Below are positions 45,216-60,295 of a stretch of DNA of 64,000 nucleotides, one piece after another. Both the position numbers and the translations under genes were made by a program. The notes beneath the pieces are model-generated. The model was not told the origin of the DNA. It did not search any database and saw nothing but the letters and a program-made list of their open reading frames with translations. The stretch comes from Octopus sinensis. Taxonomy: Eukaryota. Location of the stretch: contig NC_043013.1 of the NCBI RefSeq assembly GCF_006345805.1, positions 38,006,001 through 38,070,000 of the forward strand. Direction: 5' to 3'. Every line of letters begins with the position of its first letter. Position 1 is the stretch's first letter.

Positions 45216-46203
45216 AGGGAGAAAAAGAGGGAAAAGAGACAGACAGAAAGAGGGACAAACAGAAGTAGACAAGAATAGAAAATTGTCAGAGGAGTACTAA
45301 ATAAGTAAACGGTCAATGTCAACCAACGCAGAACACAATGATACAGCGATGAGGTTTCAATTCCCCTGTTATGCTAGCAGTATTATATTATACGGCTAAC
45401 GAACCGAGATGCCATTGTATGTGCAGCTACTGGATCCTTTTAGAAGTAGTAATCAAGTGTCCCCTAAATCAGGCCTTAATTATCTTAAAATGAGGTTTGA
45501 CATATTGAATGCTGTTGGCCATAGCTTGAAGGTCTGTGATCGAAGAACTTCAGATTCCAGAGAATCCAGAGAGATTTCTACAGCAAAATATGGCCGATCG
45601 CAAGTAGACAAGAGGATATTTAAGTGGTCGCTCGGTGTGCTAGATATAACAGCAAAATCTCATTAAACCTCTTCTAGAATGAAGAATACGTAGATAATAT
45701 TGTCTTAGATGCATTATATTTCGAAATAATAATGAGATGTTGTTGAATGGAGCGCCTTTGTCGATTAGGACAAAATCAGGGTAAAGCAACAGCCGAAAGA
45801 ATTTACGCTTGCAAAATGTTTCGGAAAGATATTTACGTTCCATTTTTTTCTTTTCTTTTTCTTTTACCTACACCTTGGCGAAGGGATGGGGGTATTGTTT
45901 TCAGTCGTGTTTGTTTGTTTGTTGGTTTGTCGTGGGAAAAACTAACTCAAGAATTGCTGGGTGGATTCAGATGAAACGTTCAGGGATGTTTAGCCTCGTG
46001 ACTGGCACGAACTGATTAGATTTTGGGATCGATCCGGTGCCGGACAAAGATTCTGGATTATTTTTCCTATTTAATTACATAATTTTTGAGAGCGATCGGG
46101 ATCATTTTTAGTATTTTCGTTTGTGAGAGCATTCTAGATTTTTCGTCTTTTCGTTTTTCTTGTTTCAGCTCAGAGCTGCGGCCATGCTGATGCACCGCCG
46201 TTT

Positions 46204-46214
46204 AAAAAAAAAAA
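46204..46214 (-). terminator. Pol III oligo-T terminator of tRNA-Gly
   Basis: An 11-T run on the minus strand, 9 nt downstream of the discriminator base. Confidence 0.8.
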
Positions 46215-46223
46215 GCTATCGCC

Positions 46224-46295
46224 TGCGTCGGCCGGGAGTCGAACCCGGATCGACTGCTTGGAAGGCAACTATGCTAACCGTTACACCACCGACAC
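46224..46295 (-). tRNA. trnG: tRNA-Gly (anticodon TCC)
   Basis: GTGTCGGTGGTGTAACGGTTAGCATAGTTGCCTTCCAAGCAGTCGATCCGGGTTCGACTCCCGGCCGACGCA: 72 nt, cloverleaf, intact A and B boxes. Confidence 0.93.
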
Positions 46296-46757
46296 TGATA
46301 TTTTCATTTTAAAAGTCATCTCTGGCTAATCGTTGAAAGGACGTTGGTGTTGCTTTGGCGGCGGTTTGCGCTCTCTGAGCTTTCTTGTTTTTATCATTTT
46401 TGTTCTTAAGGAGGCGAGCTGGCTGAAATCTTTCGCCGCCAGACACAATAACAAGTGGCATTTCCATCTTTATGCTCTGAGTTCAAATTCCACCGAGGTC
46501 AACTTTGTCTTTCATCCTTTCGGGGGCTGATAAAATATGTGCCAATTGAATACGGGAATCAATGATTAAATTGCGAAACTGATCGGCTATTATTTTTTAT
46601 TATATTGATTGTGGGCCACCAAAACGATAAAAAATAAATGACACCTATGTTTAGTTTTCAAATTAAAACGTGAAAAATGTAATAGAGTATAAATATTCTC
46701 AGAGTGTTCATCACTAGCTGATCTTAACCGTTTGAAATGTAATTATTACTACCACAG

Positions 46758-47240
46758 TGGAGGCGCAATGGCCCAGTGGTTAGTACAGCGGAGTCGCGGT
46801 TTCAATTCTCAGACCGGACAGACTGGGCTCGATATAATCGACTTAATCCGTTTGTCTGTCCTTGTTTGTCCTCTCTGTGTTTAGCCCCTTGTGGGTAGTA
46901 AAGAAATAGGTATTTCGTCTGCCACTAAGTTCTGAGTTCAAATTCCGCCGAGGTCGACTTTGCCTTTCATCCTTTCGGGTCGATTAAATAAGTACCAGTT
47001 ACGCATTGGGGTCGATATAATCGACTTAATCCGTTTGTCTGTCCTTGTTTGTCCTCTCTGTGTTTAGCCCCTTGTGGGTAGTAAAGAAATAGGTATTTCG
47101 TCTGTCTTTACGAGGTCGACTTTGCATTTCATCCTTTCGGGGTCGATAAATTAAGTACCAGTTATATACTGGGGTCAATCTAATCGACCAGTACTCTTCC
47201 CCCCAAAATTTCGGGCTTTGTGCCTAGAGTAGAAAAGAAT
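46758..47240 (+). mobile_element. SINE E head joined to tandem SINE B bodies (183-bp period)
   Basis: gatataatcgacttaatccg occurs at 46831 and 47014. Confidence 0.8.
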
Positions 47241-47606
47241 ATACGTTCTCTCATTTTTTCATGCATTGACATCAACATGCATACTTTGCTTAAATCCTTT
47301 CCGCATTGTTCAAACATTTCTGCAAATATTCCTCTCCTACACAACTACGTCTATATATAAATATATATATATGTGTGAGTTCTTGTAGATGAGGTTGTGT
47401 GCGCGTGTGTGTGTCTGTATGTATGTGTGAGACAGAATAAACTTGAAGTGCGTGGCCACATAACTATAAACACGTGTATTTTATTTGAAGTATAATAATG
47501 AATTACGATGGTACACCACCTCTTCAAATTTGTGGTGGAACAGTATAATTCAGTCAATAATTTGAAGCATATAACTGGTACATTTTTTTATTGACCACTG
47601 CGAGAC

Positions 47607-59243: not shown

Positions 59244-59797
59244 GAGTGAGAGAGCTGTTCATGCCATCAAAGTGACACTGGGGTAAAATATACGAAGCCC
59301 AATATACCCATCACGACTACCCGTCTGATAAAGGTACACCAGGCACATGCATCACAAACATATGTGCGCGACATGGTGATCTCATATCAAGATAAACAGC
59401 ACATGACCTTGCAGGTGGGTCCCAGTTAGAATTTTCTTCAGGTTGAGTAGCCCATCCCGCTCAAACGGTCCCTGAATAAGGGTTGTTTAAGGATGTTGAA
59501 AGAACCACCCATGTTTCCAGAGGTGAATTATTCAAACCCCAAAGAATCCCTCTCAACACATGGCTATGATGCTCCCCCACTACTTCTGCTCGTGATCAGA
59601 GATGCACATATCGTCAGCCACTAAGGGACATGCTCAACTGGTTAAGGTCAAACAACTGACAAGCAAATCTGTGGTATTGAGCAGAATATTTGCTGTAGCC
59701 CATCTTTTATACCAAGACAAAACAATGTACATGATAACACTTCCAATCAGTTAAGATCAGAAGCCATGAGAGCCACTGCCTGGTACTGCATCAGGGC

Positions 59798-59798
<1 letters not shown>
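59244..59798 (-). mobile_element. Element X, complete 555-bp copy
   Basis: (att)n|gagtgagagagc...ctgcatcagggca|t(tta)n. Confidence 0.9.
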
Positions 59799-59828
<30 letters not shown>

Positions 59829-60295
59829 GAGTGAGAGAGCAGTGCATGCCATCAAAGTGACACTGGCGTAGAACATACGAAGCCCAGTATACCCATCATG
59901 ACTACCCGTCTGATAAGGGTACACTAGGTACATGCATCACAACCATATGTGCAAGACATGGTGATCTTATATCAAGATAAACAGCCCATGACCTTGCAGG
60001 TGGGGCCCAGTTAGAATTTTCTTCCGGTCCAGTAACCCATCCCGTTCAAAAGATCTCTGAATAAGGGTTATTTAAGGATGTTGAACGAAACACCTTATGT
60101 TTCCACAGGTGATTTATTCAAATCTCAAAGAATCCCTCTTAACACATGGCTATGATGCTCCCCCACTATTTCTGCTCGAGATCAGAGATGCGTAGTCCAT
60201 CTTTTACACCAAGACAAACCAATGTACATGATAACACTTGCAATCAGTTGAGAACAGAAGCCACGAGAACCACTGCCTGCTACTGCATCAGGGCA
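59829..60295 (-). mobile_element. Element X, copy with ~90-bp internal deletion
   Basis: Same two termini as 59244-59798, separated from it by ~30 bp of (ATT)n. Confidence 0.88.

What the first reader, a model, noticed from the sequence alone, without database searches (positions are those of the whole stretch)
45864..46388. tRNA-Gly gene lying inside a Helentron/HINE-like element
Seen: a complete tRNA-Gly(TCC) with terminator lies antisense between a 5' hairpin/subTIR plus (GTTT)n block and a 3' subTIR plus stem-loop. Established: this end architecture characterises non-autonomous Helentrons, and rolling-circle elements capture host DNA. Inference: either a rolling-circle element is carrying and amplifying a Pol III gene, or the tRNA entered this single copy later.
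Basis: partly seen in the sequence, partly recalled or inferred. Interest (0 to 1): 0.75.

Follow-up and report, generated by a model that had tools for sequence, protein, structure and literature searches.

The report
Retro-copied tRNA-Gly nested in repeat
The glycine tRNA gene is real, but the surrounding mobile element did not capture it: it arrived later as a reverse-transcribed copy of an unprocessed tRNA fused to the last ~50 bases of a LINE, one of many such copying accidents in this octopus genome.

Summary
A complete tRNA-Gly(TCC) with a T11 terminator lies on the minus strand at 46224-46295. It sits inside one copy of a ~380-bp high-copy repeat whose ends are built like a Helentron-derived HINE.

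The capture-and-amplify reading is refuted. All 29 other copies I fetched are continuous across the site, and the tRNA/host junction occurs once in the 2.7-Gb genome.

The 152-bp insert (46144-46295) is one retroposed unit. It holds the tRNA from about its first base, the 3' trailer GGCGATAGC, T11, a ~42-nt two-hairpin tail and an A-rich simple repeat. That tail is the 3' end of an abundant LINE with endonuclease and reverse-transcriptase domains, and also of the commonest SINE.

At least 10 more tRNA-Gly+tail units exist, with at least 4 different trailers; three are 5'-truncated. Genome-wide, 76 exact-pattern matches join the 3' halves of about 20 tRNA types to this tail, and 39 join U6 to it (controls 0).

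This is best read as LINE reverse transcriptase switching template onto oligo-U-ended Pol III transcripts. That is a known kind of accident, here with an unusually fixed junction.

The scan had already noted 5.8S rRNA::SINE-tail chimeras elsewhere in this genome (s1-514796).

HINE membership of the host repeat rests on structure only; no autonomous partner was found. Interest is moderate.

The parts
45860..46143 (+). Left part of one decayed copy of a ~380-bp HINE-like interspersed repeat (host element)
   Evidence: It aligns at 82-86% to 29 other genomic copies, and the alignments stop at 46131-46143. This copy is 88.6% identical to the family consensus; the family median is 92.5%.
45867..45892 (+). 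5' subterminal inverted repeat plus its complementary inner repeat (hairpin), decayed here
   Evidence: The family consensus is CCTCCGCCTTAGCGAAGGCGGAGG. L030 folds at -10 kcal/mol, z -4.97; the window copy has z -1.65. The motif occurs 788 times in the genome against 0 for the control.
45908..45930 (+). (TGTT)n microsatellite of the host element
   Evidence: TRF reports period 4 with 5.8 copies. It is present at the same place in all aligned copies.
46144..46161 (-). A-rich simple-repeat end of the inserted retrocopy (reads ...AAGAAAAACGAAAAGACG on the minus strand)
   Evidence: It is absent from all 29 other host copies. Other tRNA+tail units end in comparable 5-7-nt A-rich repeats.
46162..46203 (-). 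LINE/SINE 3' tail module, two hairpins (AAACGGCGGTGCATCAGCATGGCCGCAGCTCTGAGCTGAAAC)
   Evidence: It is homologous to the 3' UTR end of LINE copy L077 (1033-aa ORF; RVT_1 and endonuclease domains) and to the tail of the commonest SINE. The consensus fold has two hairpins, with compensatory changes in hairpin 2.
46204..46214 (-). T11 run: Pol III terminator of the source tRNA gene, kept inside the retrocopy
   Evidence: Read directly. A T-run sits between the trailer and the tail in the other chimeras.
46215..46223 (-). 3' trailer GGCGATAGC of the source tRNA-Gly gene
   Evidence: The same trailer follows tail-less tRNA-Gly genes L034 and L040, and chimeras L032 and L038; L033 and L049 differ from it by one or two bases. 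Other chimeras have different trailers.
46224..46295 (-). tRNA-Gly(TCC), 72 nt, complete cloverleaf
   Evidence: ARAGORN and Rfam at 58 bits. It differs from the canonical sequence (17 identical copies in the sample, 62.5 bits) by C2>T and G26>A.
46296..46389 (+). Right part of the host HINE-like copy
   Evidence: It aligns to the same 29 copies, directly abutting their left parts.
46358..46381 (+). 3' subterminal inverted repeat (GGCGGCGG here, GGCGGAGG in the consensus) and 3' palindrome (GCACTC-TCT-GAGTGC in good copies), decayed here
   Evidence: Consensus. The L030 stem-loop is predicted, z -2.24; the window copy has z -0.90.

Best explanation
An old, decayed copy of a non-coding ~380-bp HINE-like repeat was later hit by a LINE-mediated retroposition event. 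The inserted 152-bp unit is a chimeric cDNA with two parts.
- Its 5' part is a copy of a tRNA-Gly(TCC) transcript. The 5' end is at or within 2 nt of the mature first base. The 3' end is still unprocessed, keeping the trailer GGCGATAGC and the oligo-U terminator run.
- Its 3' part is the last ~42 nt of an abundant LINE (endonuclease plus reverse transcriptase, probably RTE-like), which form two hairpins, followed by an A-rich simple repeat.

Proposed mechanism:
1. The LINE reverse transcriptase starts target-primed reverse transcription on the tail of a LINE or SINE RNA.
2. It copies the two recognition hairpins.
3. It jumps onto the 3' oligo-U end of a nascent Pol III transcript and copies that to its 5' end.

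The host element played no part and never propagated the tRNA. The copy keeps the internal A and B boxes and a terminator, so it could be transcribed. It has two substitutions and there is no evidence of function.

Shown here:
- the insertion is private to this one host copy;
- it entered as a single unit;
- its tail is homologous to the LINE 3' end;
- many independent sister chimeras exist, some 5'-truncated.

Inferred:
- template switching as the joining step;
- the identity of the acceptor RNA as a 5'-processed, 3'-unprocessed pre-tRNA;
- the RTE clade of the LINE.
For: **The insertion is private to this copy.** 29 of 29 other host copies are continuous across the site, reading ...GAGTTTATTT|CAGATATT..., and none has a tRNA-Gly. 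The tRNA/host junction pattern has one genome hit, the window itself.

**The unit recurs elsewhere.** The same unit (tRNA, trailer, T-run, tail, simple repeat) occurs at 10 or more other loci at 78-90% identity. Three of them are 5'-truncated inside the tRNA (L035, L038, L049). At least four different trailers are seen.

**The tail is a LINE 3' end.**
- L077 has a 1033-aa ORF with RVT_1 (5e-26) and Exo_endo_phos_2. It is followed by ...CGGTGCCCCAGCATGGCCACAGCTCGTGAGCTGAAACTAGA(ATCA)n.
- A search with the last 81 aa of this LINE's ORF returned 19,833 first-look candidates.
- The tail folds into two hairpins, and hairpin 2 covaries between the LINE-type and SINE-type variants.

**The process is general in this genome.**
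- The pattern 'tRNA T-arm, N15-45, tail' gives 76 hits with 0 in the control. They cover about 20 acceptor types and many trailers.
- The U6 3' end plus T-run plus tail gives 39 hits with 0 in the control.
- Six fetched examples were checked by sequence, ARAGORN and Rfam. tRNA-Asp, tRNA-Lys and U6 (113 bits) are full-length. L080 and L084 are 5'-truncated, and tRNA-Glu in L083 is incomplete. L079, L080 and L084 have the same microsatellite on both flanks.

**The copy drifts as a retrocopy would.** It has two transitions against the canonical gene and scores 58 against 62.5 bits.
Against: - No clear target-site duplication flanks the window insert. The A-rich tail merges into A-rich host sequence, and the candidate 15-nt duplication matches only 10 of 15.
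- The junction between the small RNA and the tail is fixed within about 3-6 nt in all chimeras. Classical U6-L1 template-switch chimeras have variable LINE lengths. Simple template switching does not explain this.
- Several Gly chimeras share a trailer (four with ATC.CTTCGTTTTT). Some amplification as a SINE, or repeated sampling of one source gene, cannot be separated.
- The LINE clade was not tested.
Confidence: 0.8

Rival explanations
1. Rolling-circle capture: the Helentron-like element picked up the tRNA gene at the DNA level and carries or amplifies it.
For: - The tRNA lies between the two ends of a HINE-like element.
- The genome holds more than 1300 Helitron-like Rep candidates, some with intact ORFs.
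- Helitrons are known to capture host DNA (established knowledge; PMC4344730 abstract).
Against: - 0 of 29 other copies carry it.
- The junction is unique in 2.7 Gb.
- The insert starts at tRNA base 1, ends in a LINE tail plus simple repeat, and has sister units at unrelated loci outside any host-family copy. These are marks of retroposition, not of DNA capture.
Confidence: 0.02
2. The insert is a member of a true, self-propagating tRNA-Gly SINE family. A master copy would be transcribed by Pol III through its T-run and mobilised by the LINE. It would not be a one-off chimera.
For: - Eleven or more copies have a tRNA-Gly head and the LINE tail.
- The window copy and L032 share both the trailer and the tail variant GCATCAGC at 90% identity.
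- Four copies share another trailer.
- An 8-copy set with one identical trailer exists for another tRNA-like head.
- SINE birth from tRNA plus LINE tail is documented elsewhere (PMC5729268).
Against: - A run of 5-11 T between head and tail should stop Pol III before the tail (established knowledge).
- At least four unrelated trailers imply several independent fusions.
- The same architecture at low copy number for about 20 tRNA types and for U6 fits repeated accidents better than about 20 separate SINE families.
Confidence: 0.13
3. DNA-level event without reverse transcription. The tRNA+tail segment would have been copied from another locus into a double-strand break (filler DNA or ectopic gene conversion).
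For: No clear target-site duplication at the window insert.
Against: - The insert boundaries coincide with the transcript start and the end of the retroposon tail.
- Sister units are 5'-truncated and end in variable simple repeats at unrelated sites.
- A DNA-level copy would be expected to carry arbitrary flanking DNA.
Confidence: 0.03
4. This rival concerns the host only. The ~380-bp family is not a Helentron derivative. It would be a non-coding retroposon read on the other strand, ending in the hairpin plus (TAA)n, and mobilised by the (TAA)n-specific Dong/R4 LINEs of this genome.
For: - TTATTA directly precedes the hairpin end in 14 of 18 copies, as a fixed (TAA)2 tail would. The other end abuts variable sequence. 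About 40% of copies sit next to TTA/TTG/TTC microsatellites.
- Earlier scan notes report Dong-type LINEs and a (TAA)n-specific passenger in this genome and window.
- No Helentron with these termini was found, and the best intact Rep/helicase ORF has no endonuclease domain.
Against: - A 9-10-bp inverted match (ACCTCCGCC / GGCGGAGGT) sits at the positions of HINE subTIRs. It is followed by a 6-bp palindrome 12 nt from the end, and the element has a 4-nt microsatellite and internal tandem repeats. Together these reproduce the HINE plan in order (PMC4067079, PMC7492417).
- Many copies have unique, non-microsatellite flanks on both sides.
- There is no sequence similarity to Element X, the (TAA)n passenger in this window.
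- Partial truncations occur at both ends at similar rates.
Confidence: 0.2

Closest known systems
U6-L1 and related bipartite chimeric retrocopies made by LINE template switching (mammals; MINE elements of Magnaporthe; PMC4476161, PMC2104539)
   Same: - The 5' part is a copy of a small nuclear RNA and the 3' part is the 3' end of a LINE or SINE.
- It inserts as one unit.
- 5' truncations occur.
- Many independent formation events are seen.
- U6 is a frequent partner here too.
   Different: - The LINE part is a fixed ~42-50-nt module joined within a few bases of the base of hairpin 1. In U6-L1 chimeras the L1 segment varies in length.
- The partners are mostly tRNA precursors that keep their 3' trailer and U-run.
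- The enzyme is a LINE whose tail is two hairpins plus a short repeat, not L1 with poly-A.
- The host is a cephalopod.
De-novo SINE emergence from tRNA plus LINE tail (for example passerine TguSINE1 with a CR1 tail, PMC5729268; 'common tail' SINE/LINE pairs)
   Same: - A tRNA head with an internal Pol III promoter is joined to the recognition tail of the partner LINE.
- The most abundant SINE of this genome shares the same tail.
   Different: - The head is an unmodified tRNA gene copy with its own terminator between head and tail, which should block transcription of the tail.
- Copy number per fusion is 1-4, not thousands.
HINE / DINE-1 non-autonomous Helentrons (PMC4067079), including oyster Cg_HINE (PMC7492417). 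This is the closest known kind for the host element.
   Same: - A 5' subTIR lies near the end, with a complementary IR 3 nt away.
- A 4-nt microsatellite and internal tandem repeats follow.
- A 3' subTIR is followed by a 6-bp palindrome about 12 nt from the 3' end.
- The termini are T-rich, there is no target-site duplication, and there are thousands of copies.
   Different: - The perfect subTIR match is 9-10 bp, against 11-15 bp in the described families.
- TTATTA is fixed at the 5' end, and TTA-type microsatellites are frequent at both ends.
- No autonomous Helentron with the same ends was identified.
Helitron gene capture (for example plant and bat Helitrons carrying host gene fragments)
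   Same: A host gene lies between the two termini of a rolling-circle-type element.
   Different: - The gene is absent from every other copy.
- It bears the marks of a later, independent retroposition, so this is nesting and not capture.

Membership tests
Helitron/Helentron gene capture | The captured segment is shared by other copies of the same element (it propagates with it) | tested here: not met
   0 of 29 other copies hold it. The junction pattern is unique in the genome. Only the window itself matches the full 525-nt query.
Helitron/Helentron gene capture | The captured DNA carries arbitrary genomic flanks of the donor locus, with no retroposition marks | tested here: not met
   The insert starts at tRNA base 1 (within 2 nt) and ends in a LINE tail plus simple repeat.
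HINE (non-autonomous Helentron), for the host repeat | Subterminal inverted repeats: the 5' one a few nt from the end, the 3' one about 38-60 nt from the end (11-15 bp) | tested here: inconclusive
   ACCTCCGCC lies 6-7 nt from the 5' end and GGCGGAGGT lies about 33-45 nt from the 3' end. The perfect match is 9-10 bp (11 of 14), shorter than in described families (PMC4067079).
HINE (non-autonomous Helentron), for the host repeat | An inner repeat complementary to the 5' subTIR (or a palindromic subTIR) and a short palindrome 8-35 nt from the 3' end | tested here: met
   The 5' hairpin in L030 folds at -10 kcal/mol, z -4.97. The 3' palindrome GCACTC-TCT-GAGTGC lies 12 nt from the end, z -2.24.
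HINE (non-autonomous Helentron), for the host repeat | A microsatellite after the 5' module and/or central tandem repeats | tested here: met
   (TGTT)n is present in all copies. Two ~37-nt internal repeats are present (D1/D3).
HINE (non-autonomous Helentron), for the host repeat | Insertion between T and T in T-rich DNA, without target-site duplication | tested here: inconclusive
   No duplication is seen in 18 copies and the flanks are T-rich. No empty site was found to fix the exact target, and TTATTA is fixed at the 5' end.
HINE (non-autonomous Helentron), for the host repeat | An autonomous Helentron (Rep/helicase/endonuclease) sharing the termini | tested here: inconclusive
   More than 1300 Helitron_like_N candidates exist. 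One intact copy (L078) has Rep plus PIF1 but no endonuclease, and none of the family's core or terminal sequence in 10 kb; the only matches were to microsatellite.
LINE template-switch chimeric retrocopy | The 5' part is a copy of a cellular small RNA and the 3' part is the 3' end of a LINE or SINE, in the same orientation | tested here: met
   tRNA-Gly plus trailer plus the LINE tail.
LINE template-switch chimeric retrocopy | Inserted as one unit, with retroposition marks (duplicated target, 5' truncation, tail repeat) | tested here: met
   Single-unit entry is shown by 29 paralogous empty sites. Sister units are 5'-truncated and end in simple repeats. No target-site duplication is discernible at the window copy itself.
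LINE template-switch chimeric retrocopy | Many independent fusions with different partner RNAs | tested here: met
   76 tRNA-type and 39 U6-type junctions with controls of 0, and different trailers.
LINE template-switch chimeric retrocopy | A variable break point in the LINE part | tested here: not met
   The junction always falls within about 3-6 nt upstream of GGCGGTGC.
SINE | Pol III head, LINE-derived tail, and amplification from master copies into a high-copy family | tested here: inconclusive
   Head and tail are present. Only 1-4 copies exist per trailer type, and a terminator lies between head and tail.

The most novel reading that the evidence does not exclude
In octopus, the ribonucleoprotein of an abundant LINE (whose tail is also carried by the commonest SINE) regularly starts on a short, protein-protected tail fragment of about 50 nt. 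At a fixed point at the base of the first hairpin it jumps onto nascent oligo-U-ended Pol III transcripts: 5'-processed but 3'-unprocessed pre-tRNAs, and U6. This would be a systematic route that scatters promoter-bearing, potentially transcribable tRNA gene copies through the genome. It would also supply the raw material for new SINE heads, so SINE birth could be studied directly from hundreds of dated intermediates.
Probability: 0.35. Interest if true: 0.55.

Novelty: new variant of a known kind. Interest (0 to 1): 0.4.

Why it matters
**For the finding as posed.** It removes an attractive but wrong idea, a Helentron spreading a Pol III gene, and replaces it with ordinary nesting of one mobile element in another.

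**More broadly.** The locus is a clean, empty-site-verified example of a class that appears common in this genome. The class consists of intact tRNA and U6 copies, with their own terminators, fused to a fixed LINE tail.
- tRNA gene counts from tRNAscan or ARAGORN in cephalopod genomes will include such retrocopies. The tail is an easy flag for them.
- The chimeras record which Pol III transcripts the LINE machinery meets, and in what processing state.
- They are the kind of intermediate from which tRNA-headed SINEs are thought to arise.
- The fixed junction is unexplained and may say something about how this reverse transcriptase handles its recognition hairpins.

Tried and rejected
1. **Autonomous Helentron partner.**
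   - PF14214 gave 150 scored Rep loci.
One 10-kb region (L078) passed.
   - Its 1515-aa ORF has Helitron_like_N and PIF1 but no endonuclease.
   - BLAST of the host-family consensus against it and against L061-L077 gave only microsatellite matches. This is no link, and also no evidence against one.
2. **Proximity by eye.** I compared the 100 listed hairpin positions with the Rep positions. None lay within 15 kb, but only 100 of 788 positions were listed, so the test is weak.
3. **Target-site duplication of the window insert.** The candidate pair (AAATGAAAATATCAG / AAACGAAAAGACGAA) matches 10 of 15 in A-rich sequence. I treat it as tail repeat, not as a proven duplication.
4. **5' leader.** An 11-nt resemblance between the window sequence upstream of the tRNA and the upstream flank of gene L034 (query 5-107) is better explained as host sequence, which matches 18 of 20 to the host consensus.
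5. **Directional truncation test for the host family.** I dropped the plan to compare counts of 5', middle and 3' motifs. The unequal conservation of the motifs would make a two-fold difference uninterpretable.
7. **Empty sites for the host family.** A search among the fetched loci found none.
Full report
**1. Observation**

ARAGORN finds a single tRNA in the 64-kb window: tRNA-Gly(tcc) at 46224-46295 on the minus strand. Rfam's tRNA model scores it 58 bits against a gathering score of 29, and it is the only Rfam hit in the window. Read on the tRNA strand, the gene is followed by GGCGATAGC and eleven T (46214-46204).

A (TGTT)n block lies at 45908-45930. They are real at family level, as section 2 shows.

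**2. The flanks are one copy of a high-copy repeat, and the tRNA is private to this copy**

A search of the window's own 2.7-Gb genome with 45864-46388 gave 4800 first-look candidates. In every scored copy, query 1-280 and query 434-525 lie 3-4 bp apart. Only the window itself matches 1-525.

Local BLAST and MAFFT of 29 fetched copies show the family running from ...TTATTA-CCTCCGCC... to ...CTCTTGTT, about 380 bp. It reads straight through the site as ...GAGTTTATTT|CAGATATTCTCATTTT.... None of the 29 loci has a tRNA-Gly. A pattern spanning the tRNA/host junction has exactly one hit in the genome, the window.

So 46144-46295 (152 bp) is an insertion into a pre-existing copy. That copy is old: 88.6% identical to the family consensus, against a family median of 92.5%. 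This refutes 'carried and amplified' and confirms 'entered this single copy later'.

**3. What the insert is**

A search with 46130-46310 on the minus strand found the same unit at unrelated loci at 78-90% identity: L032, L033, L035-L039, L043, L049 and L059. The alignment shows a common plan:
- tRNA-Gly(TCC);
- a short trailer;
- a T-run;
- (A)AATGGCGGTGCCCCAGCATGGCCACAGCTCGTGAGCTGAAACTAGA;
- a 5-7-nt A-rich simple repeat.

Three units start inside the tRNA (L035, L038, L049), which is 5' truncation. The trailers fall into at least four unrelated types:
- GGCGATAGC-like, also found after the tail-less genes L034 and L040;
- ATC.CTTCG;
- ATACCTGGTGTC;
- ATCCTTTCTTTTG.

The fusions therefore arose several times, from different source genes.

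In the window, the 5' edge of the insert falls at tRNA base 1, within 2 nt. Host sequence is recognisable up to ...AAAATGAAAATATC. The 3' edge is an A-rich repeat (…AAGAAAAACGAAAAGACG) that runs into host ...AAAAATCTAGAATGCTCTCAC. I could not demonstrate a target-site duplication.

**4. The tail is the 3' end of a LINE**

The ~42-nt module also ends the most abundant SINE of this genome (25 of the 35 distinct occurrences in my loci and window). It directly follows a coding-looking sequence in L051.

The 81-aa C-terminal ORF of L051 has 19,833 first-look candidates in the genome. One copy (L077) has a 1033-aa ORF with RVT_1 (5e-26) and an endonuclease domain (Exo_endo_phos_2, 1.6e-9). Its 3' UTR ends ...AAATGACGGTGCCCCAGCATGGCCACAGCTCGTGAGCTGAAACTAGA(ATCA)n.

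RNAalifold on 17 tails predicts two hairpins. In hairpin 2, two pairs change on both sides between the LINE-type (CAGCTC/GAGCTG) and the SINE-type (CAGTCA/TGACTG). The tail thus looks like a conserved recognition structure.

Octopus genomes are reported to hold RTE and Dong LINEs with full ORFs (PMC9115989). The single ~1030-aa ORF fits RTE, but I did not test the clade.

**5. The window copy is one of a general class**

The exact pattern GGTTCRANNCC-N(15-45)-GGCGGTGCNNCAGCATGGC has 76 genome hits, against 0 for the reversed control. The hits show about 20 different T-arm/acceptor sequences. Each is followed by varied trailers and a T-run, and then by AAT, AAC or AAA before GGCGG.

I predicted that other oligo-U-ended Pol III transcripts should be caught too. 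The U6 3' end plus T-run plus tail gave 39 hits, with 0 in the control.

Six small regions were fetched to check:
- a complete tRNA-Asp(GTC) (L079);
- a complete tRNA-Lys(CTT) (L081);
- a full-length U6 at 113 bits, model positions 1-105 (L082);
- a 5'-truncated tRNA-Glu-type copy (L080) and an incomplete tRNA-Glu(TTC), called at 66 nt (L083);
- a 5'-truncated U6 (L084).

All are fused to the tail. L079, L080 and L084 have the same microsatellite on both flanks.

I did not test that note, but it points the same way.

**6. Mechanism**

The best-supported reading is a LINE-mediated chimeric retrocopy:
1. Reverse transcription begins on the tail of a LINE or SINE RNA at the target nick.
2. The enzyme copies the two hairpins.
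3. It then switches to the 3' end of a second RNA and copies it towards its 5' end, often incompletely.

This is the mechanism proposed for U6-L1 chimeras and for fungal MINE elements (PMC4476161, PMC2104539).

The acceptor here kept its trailer and U-run but, in the window copy, no more than 2 nt of leader. That is what a pre-tRNA looks like after RNase P and before 3' cleavage. This step rests on general knowledge of La-bound precursors and was not shown here.

One observation remains unexplained. The junction is fixed within about 3-6 nt of the base of hairpin 1 for all three tail variants, unlike the variable L1 lengths in mammals. A short protected tail fragment as donor, or a structure-induced jump, are guesses.

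**7. Is the tRNA copy functional?**

It keeps the cloverleaf, the internal promoter boxes and a terminator, so transcription is possible. It differs from the canonical sequence (17 identical copies in my sample) by C2>T, which makes a U·G pair, and by G26>A. It scores 58 bits against 62.5 for the canonical sequence.

From memory, the 2:71 pair matters for glycine identity; I did not check this.

**8. The host family**

Its consensus has, in this order:
- TTATTA;
- ACCTCCGCCTT;
- a 3-nt spacer;
- AAGGCGGAGGT, together with ACCTCCGCCTT forming a hairpin (z -4.97 in L030);
- (TGTT)n;
- a body with two ~37-nt repeats;
- GGCGGAGGT;
- the palindrome GCACTC-TCT-GAGTGC;
- CTCTTGTT.

This is the order of substructures given for DINE-1/HINE (PMC4067079) and for oyster Cg_HINE (PMC7492417): 5' subTIR, IR, microsatellite, repeats, 3' subTIR, palindrome, T-rich ends, no target duplication. 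The 5' motif occurs 788 times at up to 2 mismatches, with 0 in the control.

Several points weigh against full membership:
- The perfect inverted match is only 9-10 bp.
- The TT target is unresolved.
- No autonomous partner was linked.

The frequent TTA-type microsatellites and the fixed TTATTA next to the hairpin leave room for a rival. On that reading the family is a retroposon on the other strand, mobilised by the (TAA)n-specific Dong-type LINEs noted earlier in this genome. I put HINE-like at about 0.75 and the rival at about 0.2.

**9. Verdict**

The locus is a nested insertion. It is an instance of a known kind of retroposition accident, in a form (fixed tail, unprocessed tRNA precursors, a cephalopod LINE) that my three full-text searches did not turn up. 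The library is limited, so this is not proof of novelty.

Noticed in passing
genome-wide; examples L082 (G000:C2:197817280-197817630) and L084 (G000:C3:28403250-28403600): U6 snRNA copies, both full-length (113 bits) and 5'-truncated, are fused through their T-run to the same LINE/SINE tail. There are 39 exact-pattern hits against 0 for the control.
   Followed up: partly
one search list: G000:C27:8266872, C27:11333352, C27:15868702, C27:15890005, C28:4603019, C1494, C2670, C8867: Eight near-identical units read GGTTCAAGTCCCATGGCTGGTTGTTGACAAATTTTT plus tail. This may be a chimera that did amplify (a young SINE) or a segmental duplication cluster on contig 27.
   Followed up: no
all chimeras: The small RNA joins the tail within about 3-6 nt upstream of GGCGGTGC for three different tail variants (AATGG, AACGG, AAAGG). 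Why the break point is fixed is unexplained.
   Followed up: partly
window 46420-46560, 46750-47030, 47100-47245: Directly downstream of the host element lie three copies or part-copies of another tRNA-like-headed SINE (GGAGGCGAGCTGGC...GAGTTCAAATTCCACCGAGGTCAACTTTG...). Two of them are about 183 bp apart and look like a short tandem array. The same SINE lies close to host-family copies in several other loci (L004, L005, L010, L013, L020).
   Followed up: no
L078 4355-8902 (G000:C12599:163000-172999): An apparently intact Helitron ORF of 1515 aa carries Helitron_like_N (2e-60) and PIF1 helicase (3e-63) but no endonuclease domain. It is preceded by a 437-aa ORF with no Pfam match. The genome has more than 1300 Rep candidates.
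   Followed up: partly
L050, L054-L058 (G000:C7:15473570-15494589): A dense tandem array of tRNA-Gly(TCC) genes, at least 14 within 20 kb. Most are canonical and some are variant copies. It is a likely source region for the abundant Gly transcripts.
   Followed up: no
L042 1504-1575: A tRNA-Gly-like gene has the anticodon ACC instead of TCC (one substitution in the anticodon). L044 has a Gly-like body called as tRNA-Arg(TCT). These are anticodon-shifted copies.
   Followed up: no
window 59244-60295: Two copies of the 555-bp (TAA)n-embedded 'Element X' already reported by the scan. It has no sequence similarity to the host family studied here.
   Followed up: partly
L047 700-770: A chimera keeps only the last ~15 nt of a tRNA-like 3' end (...GGGGGCGTCCCCTCCA) before GTTTTT and the tail. 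It may derive from a mature CCA-ended tRNA or be an extreme 5' truncation.
   Followed up: no
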